Shown here: positions 1 through 16,620 of the stretch, in pieces
Position numbering within the stretch: the stretch's first letter is position 1
Layout: every line of letters starts with the position of its first letter
Assembly (NCBI GenBank): GCA_964106645.2
Contig: OZ067039.1
DNA from: Podarcis pityusensis
Lineage: Eukaryota
DNA length: 64,000 bases
Direction: 5' to 3' (one strand)
Made by a program: the position numbers and the translations under genes
Notes under the pieces: generated by a model
Database searches by the model: none
Told to the model about the DNA's origin: nothing
The model's input: only the letters and a program-made list of their open reading frames with translations

Positions 1-1
1 T

Positions 2-1933
2 TTTATCTCCATCCTGAGCAAGTGCTTTGACTCGCCCTGGACTACTCGAGCCATCTCTGAAGTCTCTGGGGATAACCAGGAAAATGCATTCTTAGAGAAG
101 GGGTACCGGAGGAGGAAAAGCAGTGCTCCCAGCGAGACAGCTGAACTCAACCCCCCCGGGGGATCGGTGTCAGAAAAGAAGGTTTCAGAGACCTCCCCGG
201 TTAGCCTATTGGACAAAAAGGAAGGGGAGCAGGCCAAGGCTCTCTTTGAAAAGGTGAAGAAGTTCCGGCTCCACGTTGAAAAAGGAGACATCCTTTACAC
301 CATGTATATCCGCCAAACCGTTCTCAAAGTCTTCAAGTTTCTCGTCATCATTGCCTACAATGCAGCCTTGGTTTCCAATATCAGCTTCATTGTGCCATGC
401 ACTGTCAGGATGGAGGACATGACAGGCTATGACCATTTCTGCTGCAACCACACCAAAGCCCACCTCTTCTCCAAACTGGCCATCTGCTACATCTGCTTCC
501 TTGGCATATATGGCATGACGTGTCTCTACACGCTCTACTGGCTGTTTCACCGGCCGCTGAAAGAGTACTCCTTTCAATTTGCACGCAATGAGACAGGCAT
601 CAGCGACATTCCTGACGTCAAGAACGACTTTGCTTTCATGCTCCACCTCATTGACCAGTATGATTCCCTCTACTCCAAGCGCTTTGCTGTCTTCCTTTCT
701 GAGGTCAGCGAGTTCAGACTCAAGCAGATCAACCTCAGTCATGAGTGGACGGTGGACAAACTGCGGCAGAAGCTGCAAACCAACGCCCAAGGCCGGCTGG
801 AGCTCCATCTCTTCATGCTACCAGGGTTGCCTGACACCACCTTTGAGCTGAATGAGCTGCAGTCCCTGAAGCTGGAGCTCCTCAAAGATGTGACATTCCC
901 ACCCTCAGTGACTCAGCTGGCCCAGCTCCAGGAGCTCACACTGATCAACTCTCCCGTCAAGCTCTCTTTCACCTCTCTTATGTTCTTCCGTGAGCAGCTG
1001 AAGGTAATGACTGTGAAGTTTGATGACATCAAAGATATACCGCTATGGACCTACAACTTGAGAGGCTTGGAAGAGTTGCACATCTCGGGACTTTTCAGTC
1101 CAGAGATGGGCCGGGCAGGAACTCTGGAGAACCTGCGTGAGCTGAGGAATCTGAAGACCTTGACTCTGCACAGCAACATCTCAAAACTGCCACCTAGCGT
1201 GTCTGACGTTGCCGCCCATCTGCAGAAGCTCAGGATCTACAACGATGGGACTAAGCTAGTGACCCTCAACAACCTCAAGAAGCTCTTCTCTGTGCAAGAA
1301 GTGGAGCTGATAAACTGCAACCTGGAACGCATCCCCCATGCTGTTTTCAGCCTGGTGAACATGCAGCAGTTGGACCTCAAGGATAACCAGCTGCAGTCCA
1401 TTGCAGAGATCATCAGCTTCCAGCATTGCCGCAAGCTGGTGTGCCTCAAGCTTTGGCACAACCACATTTCCAGCATTCCTGAACACTTCCGCAAGCTCAA
1501 GACCCTAGAGCAGCTTGACCTCAGCCATAACCGCATTGAGGTCCTCCCTTCCCAACTATTCCAGTGTTCTAGGCTGCACACTTTGGACCTTTCCTATAAC
1601 AATATCCAGGTCATCCCCCCCGGGATGGGAGTCCTGCAGAGCCTTCAGCATTTTGCCATTTCTCACAACTCCTTAGAGGCACTGCCAAACGAAATCTTCT
1701 TCTGCAAGCAGCTCAGGGTTCTCAAAGTAGGACACAACAAACTGCACCGCCTCTCTGACCGTGTGAGTTGGCTGCCTTCACTCTCCACACTAGACTTGAG
1801 AGGAAACCCCCTTCAGGCCCTTCCCTTGGAGATTGGCCAGTGCCCAGTGCTCAAACGGAGTGGCCTGCTGGTGGAGAGCAGTCTTTATGAGGCGTTGCCT
1901 TTGGAAATTAGGGAGAAAATGGAGGATCAGTGA
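2..1933 (+). CDS. LRRC8E: LRRC8E (volume-regulated anion channel subunit), 5'-partial last coding exon: intracellular loop, TM3-TM4, LRR domain
   Basis: Frame +2 is open from base 2 ([23 protein letters not shown]...) to TGA at 1931-1933. LRRC8 motifs: [23 protein letters not shown]-type [46 protein letters not shown], then LRRs. E rather than C is assigned from adjacency to MAP2K7. The ORF-track start at 167 (GTG) is internal. Confidence 0.9.
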
Positions 1934-6092: not shown

Positions 6093-9000
6093 AACAGCAG
6101 CACTACCACCATACAAATGTATGGAATGAATGAATGAACGAATGAATAGGTCCCCAAATACTTGTTTGGATTACACGGGGGTCTTGTGTATGAAAACACG
6201 GCAGTTTAAGCATTTATGAGCTACGTCACTAGGTTCATTGGCTGTGTGTTGGAGCGTAATGCCACCTAGTGGTTAAAATTATTCAAGCACCTCAAAGAGC
6301 AATAATAAAATGCACTTTTATTTGTGAAAGATGTGGCTGTTCAAACTCTACTAGACAAGGCATTTCAGGTATAAGTCAAATAGCTGATTCTTCAAACCCC
6401 ACTGAAGACTCAGCCTATGCACAACTGCGATTTGTTCTCCTATGCGATCAATTAGCTGCAGACTTCCTTTTGGAAGGGAAGGTTATACATTTTTAAAGGG
6501 AATAAATAAATAGGTGGCTACTGTCCATTCCTAATATGGAATTAAGCCTCCTTACCAGTCTTCACAGCATACAGATTTCTGGGATTGCAACCAACCACAT
6601 TGTTCGGCTGTGTCAGGTCTTACAAGACTGTATGTGTGTAGAGTGGGTGATTATGTTCCTGTATTGTATAAGTGAAAAATAATGCAACTTTAAGGAGAGA
6701 TTTTGCAAAACTGAATCAAGGAATACAGTACATGAAACCTTGACCAAAATATATTGCATCTGTGCCAACTCTGACCACACATCAGGAAGGGCGGGACCTA
6801 CCAGCTGATACATGCAAAAGATATGAGTCAGTCAGGTTTCAGGTCTTGTTATGGGACCTAGAGAAGCTGAGGGAGCTGAGAAAGAACGAGTGGGTGGTCC
6901 AAAACAGGGACAGTGGCTTAGGGTGCAGGCATCACAACAGAGAAGAGTCCCTCAGACTGGGGCTAAGGCTTTATTGGGCCTAGTGGACAGGGATTGGCCT
7001 TTGAGGGTCACATGACTGAATGCTCAGGTAGACCAGTATTACATGTAGTTGAAGCAGAGTTCAGCCTGCCAAACATGCAGTTAAAGCAGACTCCTGGTGC
7101 TGCAGAGATTAAGACACCAGTCTGCTGGGAGTCCTGGTTTGTGCACACACAGTGGGTGCCATGTAACAGGCCTCTGCCTCCAGGGAGCTTGCAGCCTACA
7201 AGAGCCAGTATGCTGTGATGGCTATCATGTTAGTATTACACCAGGGATATGTGGATCTTCAGACTGACCTGTATCAACTTGTGTGCCCTTCCCTTTCTCT
7301 TGTGTGGCTAGAGTTTCCATGTGCGTCACATTCTTCAAAGTTTCAATTAGTCCTTGATTCATTCTGAAAACCTTTTAGCCTCTTTATTTCACAGTTGTGT
7401 AATGCAGGAACAGATTTCTTGCTCAAGCCACTCCACCCAACCCTGATGACCTTATGGCTGTTATTATCAGCCTTCCCTACCTCACAGGGTTGTTATGAAG
7501 AGAAAATGAAGGCAGGGAACTGTTTTGTGGGTGAGGAGTTCTCTTGTGGTTTAGTGGTCGTAGCTTAGCCCCTTCCTTCCCTTCTTCCTTCCTTCCTCCC
7601 CCCCCCCCCCATTTTTCACAGTGAGTTACAGAAGACAGAATAAGAAGTGTGAGTGAGGGAGTTTGTCACAACTGGTAGCAATCCCTTTGCAAGCAAATGA
7701 ATTCCGAGCAACGAGTTTTGCTTCCCTCCTCCTTCCTCCAGTCCTTTCGGCCTGCCTGGAGCTGCCATGGAAACGGAATAAAGCCTCTTGCACTGAGTAC
7801 AGTGTGGTGTGCAGGCTTAATGCACAAGCAAAGGAGAGGGTCTGGGAGAGGAAGATCCTTGCCGGCGGGAGAGAAAAGAGCAGAGGTTGTGCATGAAGAG
7901 TTCTAGAACCGCCTGCAGGTGAGGAATTGATGCCAAATGGGATAAGGAAGTCAGAGAGGGAGAGAAGGTTGGCATGTAACCCACAACCAGTGTTATAACC
8001 ACAGCCAAAAAAATGCTTGTGTCTGTGCATGCTAAAACCACCCTTCTAAATGATATTTAAGGACAGCCTGCTGCAGATCTGGCAACAGTGAAGTGGTTCT
8101 GTTTCAAGGCTGAGTGTCTGGGAGTGCGTGTGTTTTGTTGGTAGATGTTTTAGGGTGCCCCCAAACTGTTGATATTTTGTGGGAGGAATACAAACACATA
8201 CTGGAACTTTAGGTTTGCACAGTTAAAGTGGATTGCAACCCTCTGTCATCCTAGTATCACAAATCCACTTTAAATAAACAACATTGGACTTTTCACAGTT
8301 TACAAAGTGATGGGGAAATGCATTCAAAAGTGTGGGATGATGAATTATTATTATTTATTAAATTTGTATAACGCCCTATACAGTACTTGCAGGTCTAAGG
8401 GCGGTTCAATGACACATAAAGACCCTGCACGCACATAAGGGTGAATGTAAGATAAATACTCTTTGTTGTATAACTACCCCATAAATAAATCAGAACAAAC
8501 GCTCAATGAAGATCAGACATTGTCCAACTATTGTGTAAGCTTTGTGCAAGCATATCAGGATGAATGTTGAATAAACAGGTTGTCTGGAGGAGCCCCGCGT
8601 ATTGTGGACAAACAACAACATTGTCAGCAGCAACAGCCAAAATGAATTGGGAACTAAAGCAACAGCTGCTGTCAGAGACACCAGGATTAGATCCTCTCAC
8701 AAACAACTTGTAGCACAAATGTGCAAATCACTTATTGGTATCTCTGCTTTTCAACTTCAAGTAACAGTAATTCTTCCATCTACTCAGAGTAAGATATCAT
8801 TAAGCCTAGGCCATTTCCCACTTGCCTGATCCACTGTAGGATGTGGAAGACAAAGATGGGGAAATGGAAAGTTGCCTAAACACCACACAGTAAACCACCC
8901 TCTGTACAGCCTTAAGGCATTTTTCCATCTTTCCGCTTTCCACAAAGCAAAGTCTGGTTACAGGATCTAAGGAGAAACTGTGAGTAAGGAAGTGTTGTTG

Positions 9001-9269
9001 CTATTCATGACTTGGAGATAGGTCTTGCTTGGCGAGCATCTCGGCAGATGGCTATATGAATTATATTCTTAGAATTTTTTAAAAAAACACGTATTGAATA
9101 TTTTTCAAGCCACTCCATCTCATTGCAGTTATTCTTATTATTCAATTAGGTATTTATATCCTGCTCTTCTGCGCCAAAAGCATAATCAAGACAGCATGCA
9201 GGATAAAATAATAACAAAAACAAACTAAAATGCAATGTTAAAAACAATAACAAAGAAGCCACAATAAAA

Positions 9270-9597
9270 ACGCAGGGTTGTTTTTAAAAAATTACCTGGG
9301 ATGCATATAGGCTCTGCTCAGCGCTCCCTTTAAAGAGTCACGTGGAGCGTGTGTGCAGCTCTTGGGGGCTTTTCCCCGAGGATGGAGAAGGGCAGCCCGT
9401 CAAGTCCCTTCTCCCACCTTGCGGAAAAGCCCCCAAGAGCCACACACAGTGAAGCGGGAGAAGGGATGGAAGGGTTTTAAGCAAGAAAAGCGAGAGCCGC
9501 TTACATGCTCTGCGCAGAATATTTTTTTCTTGCTTTCCCCCTCTAAAAACTAGGTGCATCTTACGGTCAGGTGCATCTTATGGAGCGAAAAATACGG
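9270..9597. mobile_element. Tc2/pogo-type non-autonomous DNA transposon fragment with internal hairpin
   Basis: Terminus GGTGCATCTTATGGAGCGAAAAATACGG|TA (CCGTA-type TIR); internal inverted repeat at about 9352-9448. Left boundary approximate. Confidence 0.55.
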
Positions 9598-10267
9598 TAA
9601 GAGTCCATAGGTCAGGGCTGGGAAACCTGTGGCTCTCCAGATGTTGTTGCAGACTCCTCAGTGGCAAAGGTTGATAGGAGCTTGAGGACTCAGCTACATT
9701 AGTAAGGAAAAAGTGTTTTATATGCGTTATAACACTGTGACACCAGATAGCACTGTGGAATTCCATCTTTCACCAACATGCTTTCCCACTATGTTGTTTA
9801 CAACGCGTTTTCCTGAAACACTTTCTTTATGTGTCTAGATCCAGCCTAAGACCAGTGACAACTGGAGGGCTACAAGTCCCTCCCTGCCCTAGATTATTAT
9901 TTTTTCACATTTGGAATGGCAGTTCCAACTCGGCATCCACAGATGCCCTGCTGCCCACATTGGTGCCCCTGGGCGGGGGAGGACAGATTATGAGCTTTTA
10001 TTTTTTATTTAAAAAAAAAGTAAGGCTCTAGCCTTCCAGGAAAGTTATGAAGCAAAACATACAGGTACCCTTCTAAGTGATTTCTGCAAGATGGGGGCTG
10101 CTGCCTGTCAATGCTTTTAACCAACGAATGAAGCTGTGATTGATAAATGTGTTGTTTAGACACCAGGCATTAGGAATCCCCCTGTCCTTTAGCACACTTT
10201 TCCTGTTTCTGTCTGTCCTATTTATAGTCTTTGGATTCTCTTTAGTTTGCCCTTCTTTTCCCCGTAG

Positions 10268-10322
10268 CAGCCAGGATGCATCTTCCCTAAGGTCTCTTGG
10301 TGTTAACCAGGGCTTTTTGCAG
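10268..10322 (+). other. Candidate non-coding 5'UTR exon of the LRRC8D-like gene
   Basis: Pyrimidine tract, then TAG|CAG acceptor (10265-10270), and a perfect donor CAG|GTAAGT (10323-10328), about 630 bp upstream of the coding-exon acceptor. Confidence 0.4.
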
Positions 10323-10782
10323 GTAAGTGGGTGCAGGATGGCAGCCTAGACTTTGGTTTATGGTTGACGCTCAGGAAACAGGAGGTTCTTGTGTCCTTGG
10401 CAGCTGTATGGCAGGCAGAAACTCAACAGGTCAAGGCAAGCCTTTCCTAGTATGGAAAGCCTCGCCATAACTGTACTGTCTCTAAGTTTGGGTTATGCCT
10501 GACCACTTTGTTCATCAATGACGGCGCTGTCAATAGTGCCACACAATGCCTGCTGTACAACTACCAGGAGAGGAGCATTCAGTGTGGCAGCATCAAAATG
10601 ATGGAACTCCCTCCCAATGTGCATTATGCAAGCGCCTTCTGTTTTGTAATTTCAAACACATTTCTGTTTAACCAAGCCTTCCTTGAAGTGTGACCAGTTC
10701 TGTATTTTAGTCATTTATAGCTGAACAGTTTTAATGTTTAACTTTTTATATTGTTCCGTGTAACTTTGTATTGCTCACAGTT

Positions 10783-10785
<3 letters not shown>

Positions 10786-10863
<78 letters not shown>
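10786..10863. repeat. (GT)n(AT)n microsatellite
   Basis: Read directly. Confidence 0.9.
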
Positions 10864-10864
<1 letters not shown>

Positions 10865-10953
10865 ACTAGCTAAATGTGCTAAACAAGCAGACTTTGTTTC
10901 AGTACAATAGCCAAGGATGTTACTCAATTCCCACTTACCATTTGCTTCTAGTG

Positions 10954-12117
10954 ATGTTTAACCTGACAGAAGTGACCTTCCTCGGTGATGCCCACGCTCG
11001 GTTCCAGACTCTAAAGCCTTGGTGGGATGTCCTGATGGACTACTTGGTAGTAGCAATGCTTATGGTCTCTCTCCTCTCAGGTACTCTGCTGATTTCTGTT
11101 GACCATATGACCTGCTTGCCACTGAATTACAAGCTAAATGAGACCACAGCAGCTATGCTCAAGCCTGGAGCTATGGACAGTGCCACCAATGAAGAGTTTT
11201 CTGCTGAGAACAGTGGACGCCCAATCAACCTTGACTACCAGCAGTACCTGTACATAAACCATGTCTGCTATCAGAATGCTTTGCCTTGGTTCTCCAAGTA
11301 TTTTCCTTACCTAGCACTTGTCAACTCACTGGTTTTAATGGCAAGCAGCAACTTCTGGTTCAGGTACCCTAAGACGTCCTCAAAGATCGAACACTTCTTA
11401 TCCATCCTCATGAAATGCTTTGAGTCCCCTTGGACCATCAAGGCCGTCTCTGAAATGGTCTACCAGAATTTCGTAGACCTACCCAAAACCACGGATACTA
11501 GAGGGTGTCAAGAACAATTTATTTCCCCTTCATCCTCTCCTATCCTTGACTGGAAGGAGAGGGAGCAGGGCCGGGCACTCTTTGAGAAGATCTGCAGATT
11601 CAGGGCACATGCTGAAGGTGCCAGCTTGATTTATATGGTCTACATGGGACAAACAATCTTCAAAGTTGCCAAGATCCTAACTGTGCTGGGCTACACCTCC
11701 AACTGCATAGGAGCCATCTCCTTTGAACATGTTTGCTGGCTGGACACAAAGAACCTCACCGGCTACTCTGTTTTCCTCTGTAACCACAGCTTGGCTTTCA
11801 TTCTGCAGAAGTTGATGGTGACCTACCTGTTCTTGGTATTCCTCTATGGGGTGGTGGGGGCTTACCCACTGATGTGGCTGCTGCGGCAGCCGCTGCAGAA
11901 GTATTCCTTTAAGCAAATGCGAGAAGACAGTCACTTTCTTGGCATCCCAGATGTCTACAACGACTTTGCTTTCCTCCTGCACATGGCTGATCAGTGCGAC
12001 CAACTATACTCCTGGCGGTTTGCCATCTTCCTCTCAGCCATGAGCAAGAGCTCTTTGCTGGATGTGGGCCTTGAACACAAGGCAAGTATTGAAGGGCTGC
12101 AGCTGCATGTGCATTGA
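10954..12117 (+). CDS. LRRC8D-like protein lacking the LRR domain (387 aa, pannexin-like 4-TM domain only); single coding exon; functional status uncertain
   Basis: ATG at 10954, 2 nt after the acceptor TTTGCTTCTAG. MFNLTEVTFLGDAHARFQTLKPWWDVLMDYL resembles LRRC8D MFTLAEVASLNDIQPTYRILKPWWDVFMDYL. D-type motifs AISFEHVC, KCFESPWT, FLLHMADQCDQLYS; four extracellular Cys kept. TGA at 12115-12117 falls where the LRR region should start. Confidence 0.8.
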   Translation: MFNLTEVTFLGDAHARFQTLKPWWDVLMDYLVVAMLMVSLLSGTLLISVDHMTCLPLNYKLNETTAAMLKPGAMDSATNEEFSAENSGRPINLDYQQYLYINHVCYQNALPWFSKYFPYLALVNSLVLMASSNFWFRYPKTSSKIEHFLSILMKCFESPWTIKAVSEMVYQNFVDLPKTTDTRGCQEQFISPSSSPILDWKEREQGRALFEKICRFRAHAEGASLIYMVYMGQTIFKVAKILTVLGYTSNCIGAISFEHVCWLDTKNLTGYSVFLCNHSLAFILQKLMVTYLFLVFLYGVVGAYPLMWLLRQPLQKYSFKQMREDSHFLGIPDVYNDFAFLLHMADQCDQLYSWRFAIFLSAMSKSSLLDVGLEHKASIEGLQLHVH

Positions 12118-12385
12118 TACTCAAGGGCATCAGAGAACTAAGGCTTCACAAGCTGCCAGGCTACCTAGGGCCCTCTTCTGTGAAATGGAAGTCCCGAAGC
12201 TTGCAAACAGTCCCAGACTAAAGCAGCCAGAAAAATAGGTATACTAACCTTTCTCTATCCTCATTGGTCAAGATGGGCCCCACTGACCTAGGAAAGCCCA
12301 CAGTATTCCACATCACATTTCCTGACATTACAACCTGGGGCTCTCTCTCTCAGGGGTCTCCATCAGTATCTCTCTAGCAACTTTG
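12113..12385 (+). pseudogene. Frameshifted remnant of the LRR-domain start of the LRRC8D-like gene
   Basis: Fragments in changing frames: IDTQGHQ / ELRLHKLP / LPRALFCEMEVPKL ... VFHITFPDITTW / LSLRGLHQYLSSNF. They align to LRRC8 RNAQDKQELHLFMLSGVPDAVFDLTDLDVLKL...LHVKFTDVAEIPAWVYLLKNLRELYL. Confidence 0.7.
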
Positions 12386-12471
12386 GCAAGATGAAAGATG
12401 CACTGTTCAGACCTGTCCTTGTTGGGCTGGGATTATGAATATGGATTTCATATGGATATGAATATAGAAGA

Positions 12472-12655
12472 AGGGGTACAGCGCAATAGTTAAGCATGGG
12501 CTTTGTATGCAAAAGATCCTAGGTTCAATCGTTGGCATCTCCAGTTAGGGCTAGGAAAGGCTCCTGTCTGAAACCATGGAGAACTGCAGCCGGTCAGTAA
12601 TACTGACCTAGACAGAGCAATAGTCTGATCCAATTTAAGGAGCCTCTGATATTCT
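12472..12655 (+). mobile_element. tRNA-derived squamate SINE (Squam3-like)
   Basis: A-box/B-box (GGTTCAATC) head, then GGCATCTCCAG...GGAAAGGCTCCTGTCTGAAACC...CCGGTCAGT body. Confidence 0.55.
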
Positions 12656-13320
12656 GATTAACTGAGGGCTGAAGATAAGGCAGATTCACAACTGGATCCT
12701 TTAACTTTTGTTTCTGTTTTAATGCAGTAGTTTTTATTAGCTGCTCTGCAATAAAAACAACAGGTACCTGCGTTGCCTGTGAACTTTCCTCCCTGGGGTT
12801 AATAACAGCTCTCTCTCTCTCTCTGTGTTTTTGGGGGTGGGGGAAGGGATCAAGGAATTGGCACCAATAATTGGAAAACTTCAATAGAAACCAAAGCCTC
12901 TTCTGTATTTCTGCTTAAAACAACAACAACAACAACAACAAATAATACACTGACCTGGGGATAAGTCCAATAGGGACATACTTTTGAGTAAATATGCATA
13001 GGATTGCTGTAGCATTTATTGCATCTGTTCTAGCCCTGAGATTTTAAGAGAGAAGCAGATTTGAGTTGGCATGATTTCCCTGAACTATGCTGAAAGTAAA
13101 CACATAAGCACATACAAATTAATGTAGAAAACTGTAACATTTTCTCCAAATGATCTTTTCAATGTTTGTTTGTTTGTAAAAAAAGAATTGCAGGACTCTA
13201 CAGTTTCAGTTTAAGAGTGTAAGGAGTTGTAGGTAGTGAAGTGATCCACTTTCTGAAACCAAAGGAGAGTATTAGTCATATGATGGCACAATGGGCCATC
13301 AGTGTGCCTGGCTGTTAACC

Positions 13321-15819: not shown

Positions 15820-16620
15820 AATACTGGCGAGGAGAACGTCCAAAATATCATTGACGGCGCGGCCGCGTTGATACTGAGCTCGGGCAGCACTTTGGTGCCC
15901 TCGCGCATGCGCGAGCCAGGAAAAACCGCGAGGCAAAACAAGCACAGCGGGCAAAAGTGGAGCCGTGCCTTTGCGGTGGGCGGAGGAGGATGATGATAAT
16001 ATGGTGGCCTGGTTGGTCCTTTCGGCGCGTGCGCACTGCGGTGTTTGTGTATTCTGGCTGCGCGGTGGCGGCAGCGTCGGCGGCTCCGGGGGAGGGGGGG
16101 GAAGATGGCGGCGTCCTCGCTGGAGCAGAAACTGTCCCGCTTGGAGGCCAAGCTGAAGCAGGAGAACAGGGAGGCCCGGAGGCGCATCGACCTCAACTTG
16201 GACATCAGTCCGGCCCGGACTCGGCCTAGTAAGGGAGGCTTTGAGGGGGGAAACGGGGGCGGCGGCAGGGGAGGCTCCGCGGAAGGCACCCCCCCGCTTG
16301 GGCGACTGACACGGGCCCGCCTGGGCAGGAGCCCCGGGGCCGGAGGGATGCGGGGCGGGGATGGGAAGAGCCGAGCTGCCCCGGAGAGGGGCCGGTAGAG
16401 AAAGGTCCTCCCGGAGAAGCGAAGGGGTCGGGAAACCCGGGGCGGGGAAACAAGGGGGCTCTTGTTTACCACGGAGTCTGAGGGAGGTGGAGGCCCAAGG
16501 CCAGGACACACCGGGGCAGGGAGAAAGAAGACCCAGGGGAAAGGTAAAGAATCCAGTGGGGAAGGGACTTGGAGGAAGGCGTGGGCGTGGGGGGCGGGGA
16601 AGAGTTCGAGAAGGAAGAAA
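15820..16620 (+). promoter_or_regulatory. MAP2K7 CpG-island promoter with NRF1 and YY1 motifs
   Basis: Only strongly CpG/GC-rich segment of the window. Palindrome CTCGCGCATGCGCGAG (15900-15915, NRF1 consensus); second NRF1-like GCGCGTGCGCA near 16025; YY1 motif AAGATGGCGGC overlapping the start codon (16102-16112). No TATA seen. Confidence 0.8.
16105..16228 (+). CDS. MAP2K7: MAP2K7 coding exon 1 (MAASSLEQKLSRLEAKLKQENREARRRIDLNLDISPARTRP)
   Basis: Matches the MKK7 N-terminus; Kozak AAGATGG; donor A|GTAAGG; 124 nt, phase 1. Confidence 0.97.

What the first reader, a model, noticed from the sequence alone, without database searches (positions are those of the whole stretch)
10954..12385. LRR-less LRRC8D-like gene: intact pannexin-like pore domain, destroyed LRR domain
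Seen: a 387-codon ORF with no frameshift, covering the N-terminus, all four TM helices, the four extracellular cysteines (HMTCLP, NHVCYQ, EHVCWL, FLCNHS) and the PDVxNDFAFLLH linker. It stops exactly where the LRR region begins. Immediately after, LRRC8-like sequence continues with at least three frameshifts in about 60 bp and fades out by about 12385. Known: LRRC8 proteins are pannexin-like TM domains fused to LRRs and form heteromeric VRAC channels with LRRC8A; mammals have five genes (A-E), none between LRRC8E and MAP2K7. Inference: decay confined to the LRR part suggests the TM domain stayed under selection after LRR loss. This could be a naturally LRR-less VRAC subunit or modulator, a reversion toward pannexin architecture. 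Caveat: substitutions at conserved sites (YSKRF>YSWRF, DQYD>DQCD, Pro in TM4, HEWT>HKAS) also fit a pseudogene under relaxed selection.
Basis: partly seen in the sequence, partly recalled or inferred. Interest (0 to 1): 0.9.

Follow-up and report, generated by a model that had tools for sequence, protein, structure and literature searches.

The report
Lizard channel subunit missing regulatory domain
Lizards and some snakes keep a spliced, selectively conserved gene for a cell-swelling channel subunit (an LRRC8/VRAC paralog that mammals lack) that lost its whole cytoplasmic regulatory domain early in their evolution, a natural test of what that domain does.

Summary
Confirmed. The 387-codon ORF is exon 2 of a spliced gene (junction 7918>10952 in two runs). 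It encodes only the LRRC8 pore domain; an LRR remnant lies in the 3' UTR. It is not a lineage-specific pseudogene. LRR-less orthologs of 377-432 aa occur from geckos to vipers, in the LRRC8E-MAP2K7 interval in the loci whose neighbours could be seen. dN/dS is 0.30 overall and 0.07-0.26 in helices. A shared 10-nt deletion dates LRR loss to before geckos split off. The 'decay' substitutions Y>C and K>W are fixed across the family. The gene is a sixth jawed-vertebrate paralog, sister to LRRC8D, and is full-length in most turtles, salamanders, caecilians, lungfish, coelacanth, sturgeon and sharks. Cheloniid sea turtles broke it at the same boundary independently. Most likely it is an LRR-less partner of LRRC8A that retunes VRAC gating or osmolyte permeation; this is inferred, not shown. 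Human LRRC8C cut at this boundary is either constitutively open (L400fs) or nearly silent (t419, the equivalent of this stop). RefSeq auto-names it 'LRRC8D-like'; I found no paper describing it and no earlier scan note.

The parts
7761..7774 (+). Conserved promoter element resembling an RFX X-box (GCTGCCATGGAAAC), just upstream of exon 1
   Evidence: A degenerate version occurs once in 9 of 11 loci, turtles to python. It is the only match in the window, with 0.06 expected. Calling it an X-box rests on my own knowledge of the motif.
7810..7918 (+). Non-coding exon 1 (5' end approximate; one contig starts at 7751). It holds a non-conserved upstream ATG at 7893 that is out of frame here
   Evidence: Spliced contigs in runs X1 and X5. 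Exon and CAG|GTRAG donor are conserved in turtles and most squamates; the uATG is not.
7919..10951 (+). Intron, GT..AG, 3033 nt
   Evidence: Joint seen in X1 and X5, absent from the DNA-type run X19. The acceptor two bases before the ATG is conserved in all orthologs.
10954..12117 (+). CDS, 387 aa: LRRC8 pore domain only (N-terminus, TM1-4, two extracellular loops with 4 Cys, intracellular subdomain)
   Evidence: purifying selection
12118..12388 (+). Decayed remnant of the first LRRs, now 3' UTR; carries a 10-nt deletion shared with gecko, skink and amphisbaenian
12750..12755 (+). AATAAA, the likely polyadenylation signal (the spliced contig ends at 12771)
   Evidence: sequence; contig end (contigs cannot prove an RNA end)
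1..1933 (+). 3' part of the upstream neighbour LRRC8E (intact LRRs)
   Evidence: same position in Caretta, Emys and Elgaria loci
16045..16398 (+). ORF containing the first coding exon of the downstream neighbour MAP2K7
   Evidence: a kinase gene lies at the same place in L001-L005, L009 and L010 (the L005 call is only 3 bases at the locus edge)

Best explanation
A functional, squamate-specific LRR-less form of an ancient sixth LRRC8 paralog (sister of LRRC8D). Shown: it is spliced, the stop is in the last exon, the pore domain is under purifying selection across squamates, and the LRR domain was inactivated before geckos split from other squamates. Inferred: the mRNA escapes nonsense-mediated decay. 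The protein folds as an LRRC8 pore domain, is glycosylated at N62, and, like other non-A subunits, co-assembles with LRRC8A into a conducting heteromer. It would give a D-like aromatic residue (Y95) to the outer filter, favouring organic osmolytes. It would leave a gap in the cytoplasmic LRR ring, so gating rests on the LRRC8A domains alone. I lean towards a lowered activation threshold or some basal activity.
For: Omega 0.30 with omega=1 strongly rejected. Lowest omega (0.07-0.08) in TM1, EL1 helix, TM2 and IL1 helices, against 0.45-0.70 in the disordered loops. No net frameshift in the ORF against frequent frameshifting indels just after it. Filter residue Y95, E6, T44, W160, K201 and the 4 Cys are kept; N62 sequon position invariant. 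Model matches the LRRC8D chain of an A:D channel best (9dx7_E, E 6e-25). Spliced contigs in two studies. Human LRRC8C cut at the same boundary still multimerises and, as L400fs, gives current at isotonicity (PMC11729881). The L402-equivalent residue, whose changes open LRRC8A (PMC13586329), is P, F, M or S in the toxicoferans sampled.
Against: No protein, localisation, co-assembly or current data exist. The lacertid stop maps onto LRRC8C residue 419 (offset), and LRRC8C t419 assembled but gave very low currents. The N-terminus is less constrained (omega 0.37) than the helices, and LRRC8D's is nearly invariant. No ortholog was found from colubrid or elapid snakes; one Logan gecko-like sequence is frameshifted (P0015) and the tegu model is a 155-aa fragment. 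The AlphaFold model is moderate (pLDDT 63) and monomeric.
Confidence: 0.5

Rival explanations
1. A damping or decoy subunit: it assembles with LRRC8A but gives poorly gating channels, lowering VRAC activity in the cells that express it.
For: The stop is equivalent to LRRC8C t419, which assembles but gives low current; the ebouriffe LRRC8A truncation also loses activity. The N-terminus is less constrained.
Against: The exposed filter tyrosine and E6 are conserved, which a pure decoy need not keep. Several new residues were fixed in the intracellular subdomain on the squamate stem (C348, W354, M363, L377, R203, G206), so t419 is an imperfect model.
Confidence: 0.22
2. A homomeric, LRRC8A-independent large-pore channel that works like a pannexin (for example releasing ATP or osmolytes), gated by new cues at the remodelled intracellular subdomain.
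For: Pannexin-like architecture; long squamate stem branch (0.72-0.9 changes per site); newly fixed cytosolic Cys and Trp. Single changes in this subdomain open LRRC8A homomers. LRR-less LRRC8C still multimerises.
Against: Homomers of LRRC8C, D or E are non-functional without LRRC8A or its intracellular-loop stretch (PMC9399500). The IL1 loop of this protein is short and weakly constrained (omega 0.45).
Confidence: 0.12
3. An intracellular (ER or lysosomal) membrane protein whose role is not plasma-membrane VRAC, such as an organelle leak channel or an assembly factor.
For: Non-A subunits depend on LRRC8A to reach the membrane, and C-terminal truncation of LRRC8A causes retention.
Against: The extracellular-loop architecture and sequon are conserved; there is no positive evidence for an organelle role.
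Confidence: 0.1
4. A transcribed pseudogene or slowly dying gene whose frame survives by chance.
For: It evolves faster than LRRC8D (72-88% against 91-95% identity among squamates). There are apparent losses or breaks in some lineages. Sea turtles show a similar break that may be early pseudogenisation.
Against: Omega 0.30 with LRT about 288; pairwise 0.10-0.29. Intact frames in more than 20 species. Between the window and run X1, 9 synonymous against 7 amino-acid-changing codons. Promoter and splice sites are conserved.
Confidence: 0.04

Closest known systems
LRRC8D (VRAC subunit, SWELL4)
   Same: Sister clade; best sequence and fold match; aromatic filter residue (Y95 against F143/Y); MF-x-L-x-EV start; 4 Cys.
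   Different: A separate paralog since before the shark/bony-fish split, at another locus (LRRC8E-MAP2K7); squamates also keep true LRRC8D (P0102, P0130, P0156). No LRR domain, shorter loops, faster evolution.
Full-length orthologs: turtle, salamander, caecilian, lungfish, coelacanth and shark 'LRRC8D-like' (UniRef label Si:ch211-106h11.1 on the coelacanth protein)
   Same: One clade, SH-aLRT 95-97. Same position between LRRC8E and a kinase gene in Emys and Caretta. Same promoter element and exon 1 in turtles.
   Different: They keep about 400 aa of LRRs (781-857 aa in all). Micro-synteny was not confirmed in bowfin, where the neighbour is a DDX39-like helicase.
Human LRRC8C truncations (p.Leu400IlefsTer8, t419) and mouse LRRC8A ebouriffe
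   Same: Pore domain without the LRR domain, stop in the last exon. The lacertid end equals LRRC8C 419.
   Different: These are pathogenic, rare or engineered alleles, whereas this is a fixed, selected gene with further changes in the intracellular subdomain.
Pannexins (PANX1-3) and innexins
   Same: Four-TM large-pore fold without LRRs.
   Different: By sequence it is an LRRC8: all 26 PDB sequence matches and the top 50 fold matches are LRRC8. The resemblance comes from secondary domain loss.

Membership tests
LRRC8 family | Pannexin-like TM region (PF12534) with 4 TM helices and 4 extracellular cysteines | tested here: met
LRRC8 family | Descent within the LRRC8 clade | tested here: met
   nested in a clade that is sister to LRRC8D
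LRRC8 family (canonical architecture) | C-terminal domain of 10-17 leucine-rich repeats | tested here: not met
   No LRR hit; remnant frameshifted and mostly deleted; no downstream splice restores it
LRRC8D orthologs | Orthology to LRRC8D by tree and locus | tested here: not met
   Separate clade with its own shark-to-amniote members; true LRRC8D present in the same species
Sixth paralog (turtle/amphibian/fish 'LRRC8D-like') | Same clade and same LRRC8E-MAP2K7 position | tested here: met
   Tree; synteny shown for turtles and squamates, not for fish
VRAC subunit | Co-assembly with LRRC8A and delivery to the plasma membrane | not testable with these tools
   Only indirect: helices and the EL1 helix are strongly conserved
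VRAC subunit | Swelling-activated anion or osmolyte flux | not testable with these tools
   needs electrophysiology
Pannexin family | Sequence membership (pannexin/innexin family hit) | tested here: not met
   Only PF12534 is hit; no pannexin among PDB sequence matches
Pseudogene | Neutral evolution (dN/dS near 1, frame breaks spread through the gene) | tested here: not met

The most novel reading that the evidence does not exclude
After losing its LRR domain, the protein became an LRRC8A-independent, swelling-uncoupled large-pore channel: a functional return to a pannexin-like channel from inside the LRRC8 family, possibly being repeated in cheloniid sea turtles.
Probability: 0.12. Interest if true: 0.88.

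Novelty: new variant of a known kind. Interest (0 to 1): 0.66.

Why it matters
How the LRR domain gates VRAC is an open question (PMC13586329, PMC12182595). Evidence so far comes from disease alleles and engineered cuts that give opposite results within 20 residues (PMC11729881). Here evolution supplies a panel of natural LRR-less subunits with different tails, plus full-length turtle and salamander orthologs as matched controls. They can be tested directly in LRRC8-null cells. It also revises the family: jawed vertebrates appear to have had six paralogs, with an E-X tandem mirroring the C-D tandem. The sixth is absent from the mammalian set, kept whole in amphibians and most turtles, and truncated in squamates.

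Tried and rejected
Assembly error: rejected by an independent DNA-type run, spliced contigs and orthologs. Splice donor at 10322: not among the joints listed. Downstream splicing that would restore LRRs: one contig runs unbroken to 12771, and no LRR sequence remains before MAP2K7. Recent LRRC8D duplicate: rejected by the tree. N-terminal extensions in the Elgaria and Hemicordylus models: the upstream ATG is not conserved and is out of frame here. A single shared stop codon: not found; tails run 36-87 aa past the DQCDQ motif, and toxicoferans have replaced tails. Deep micro-synteny: not confirmed in bowfin; the gar protein was not on record. Literature: no hit for 'LRRC8F' or '106h11.1'; one irrelevant hit for LRRC8 + squamate; two seabream papers for 'LRRC8D-like'. 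Abascal and Zardoya 2012 is not held, so I could not check whether it lists this paralog in fishes. Earlier scan findings: none relevant. The careful tree did not finish; both trees are quick searches with SH-aLRT support only, and no AU test was run. Tissue of expression is hidden by run coding.

Full report
Observation. The window holds an uninterrupted 387-codon ORF at 10954-12117 (+), between the 3' part of LRRC8E (1-1933) and MAP2K7 (from about 16 kb). It matches only PF12534, the pannexin-like region of LRRC8, and no LRR family. Its best solved relative is LRRC8D, aligned up to residue 464/465. Behind the TGA, LRRC8-like peptides appear in alternating frames. DNA similarity to an intact turtle ortholog runs to about 12388 with about 20 small indels. 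The remaining LRR sequence is gone. An independent DNA-type run reproduces 10874-12801 without gaps, so this is no assembly error.

Transcript. Two runs from different studies and organisms show a GT..AG joint 7918>10952, which the DNA-type run lacks. One contig covers 7810-7918 plus 10952-12771, ending 16 nt after an AATAAA. The runs are only guessed to be RNA by the tool; the spliced joint is my reason to treat them as such. The ATG lies two bases into exon 2, and the stop is in the last exon seen, so escape from nonsense-mediated decay is expected (established knowledge; the same argument is made for LRRC8C L400fs in PMC11729881). The acceptor, exon 1 and its donor are conserved from turtles to python. 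So is a 14-nt element at 7761-7774 that resembles an RFX X-box (my knowledge; function untested).

A squamate-wide family. Orthologs of 377-432 aa, all without LRRs, come from geckos, skinks, a cordylid, an amphisbaenian, lacertids, iguanians, anguimorphs, python and vipers. In the loci where neighbours were called, LRRC8E lies upstream and/or a kinase gene downstream. RefSeq names them 'LRRC8D-like' automatically. The stop differs between lineages, but no ortholog ends before about LRRC8C 409. Gecko, skink, amphisbaenian and lacertid share a 10-nt deletion in the remnant. The LRR was therefore dead before geckos split from the rest, roughly 190-200 million years ago (date from my knowledge). 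In toxicoferans the remnant is no longer detectable.

Selection. A codon model on nine squamates gives omega 0.30, with lnL -5618.8 against about -5763 when omega is fixed at 1. Pairwise values are 0.10-0.29. By region, TM1, the EL1 helix, TM2 and the first IL1 helices are 0.07-0.08. TM3, EL2, TM4 and IL2 are 0.14-0.26, the N-terminus 0.37, and the disordered loops 0.45-0.70 (pooled, non-independent pairs). ORF indels preserve the frame, while the remnant is full of frameshifts. Even between this genome and run X1 there are 9 synonymous against 7 amino-acid-changing codons. The gene does evolve faster than LRRC8D.

Origin. A turtle query finds full-length relatives with intact LRRs in most turtles, salamanders, caecilians, lungfish, coelacanth, bichir, sturgeon and sharks. 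The Emys gene sits between LRRC8E and the kinase. In two quick maximum-likelihood trees these form one clade with the squamate proteins (SH-aLRT 95-97). In the second tree it is sister to a complete LRRC8D clade that has its own shark-to-mammal members. The turtle-squamate join is between long branches, but synteny supports it independently. This is a sixth paralog older than the shark/bony-fish split. That E-X mirrors the C-D tandem as a genome-duplication pair is inference; in bowfin the neighbour is a DDX39-like gene. No crocodilian, bird, tuatara, mammal, colubrid or elapid member appeared, which is weak evidence of loss because the searches are limited. Caretta and Lepidochelys share a +1 frameshift at the same boundary with the pore domain intact. 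This is independent of squamates, since Dermochelys and Emys are whole; whether it is functional is open.

Mechanism. The AlphaFold model (pLDDT 63) has the LRRC8 pore-domain topology and best matches the D chain of an A:D channel. Kept: E6, T44, the four cysteines, W160 (LRRC8A W168), K201 (K235), an aromatic filter residue Y95 (R103 in A, F143 in human D) and the N62 sequon. Non-A subunits need LRRC8A to form working channels (PMC9399500), so a heteromer is the default expectation. The direction of the effect is uncertain. LRRC8C L400fs, which lacks the LRR domain, is open at isotonicity, whereas t419 assembles but is nearly silent and t379 is not expressed (PMC11729881). The lacertid end maps to 419 (offset). 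However, squamates fixed several new residues in the intracellular subdomain, and toxicoferans changed the L402-equivalent, a known activation hotspot (PMC13586329). I put a conducting, retuned A/X channel at 0.5, a decoy at 0.22, an A-independent pannexin-like channel at 0.12, an intracellular role at 0.10 and a pseudogene at 0.04. Shown: sequence, splicing, selection, ancestry. Inferred: translation, assembly, gating.

Comparison and novelty. It is an LRRC8 by descent and by its TM domain. It fails the canonical LRR feature, is not an LRRC8D ortholog, and is not a pannexin. I found no paper describing an LRR-less LRRC8 gene or this paralog. The 2012 evolutionary paper was not available, so a prior mention of the full-length paralog cannot be excluded. 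No earlier scan note covers it. Verdict: new variant of a known kind, interest 0.66.

Noticed in passing
L001:11230-12400 (Caretta); P0340, P0341 (Lepidochelys); P0049, P0050: Cheloniid sea turtles carry frameshifts in the LRR part of the same gene, the first right at the pore/LRR boundary, with the TM part intact (Caretta vs Emys omega 0.26 in TM, 0.43 in LRR). Either a second independent truncation or early pseudogenisation.
   Followed up: partly
window 7761-7774: X-box-like element conserved in turtles and squamates next to exon 1, with a conserved AARCAAATGA-like motif about 70 nt upstream; hints at RFX-type (ciliated cell or testis) control.
   Followed up: partly
window 7893-7918 + 10952-10961: In this lineage an upstream ATG in exon 1 opens an 11-codon uORF that overlaps the main ATG out of frame and could lower translation. 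In Elgaria and Hemicordylus an exon-1 ATG is in frame; in most others it is absent.
   Followed up: partly
window about 9008-9035: Sequence matching the alternative first coding exon of a Zootoca model (P0306, MTWRY...), here with an in-frame TAG and a GC at the donor.
   Followed up: no
P0164 and its cluster (sharks): A further, highly divergent LRRC8D-like paralog in sharks that falls outside both the D and X clades.
   Followed up: no
P0015 (Logan, gecko-like), P0185 (Salvator): Frameshifted or fragmentary orthologs, and none found from colubrid or elapid snakes: possible lineage-specific losses or assembly/annotation gaps.
   Followed up: no
P0300, P0303 (Podarcis isoform X2): RefSeq lists a 336-aa isoform starting at M52, lacking the N-terminus and TM1; no matching joint was among those listed.
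   Followed up: no
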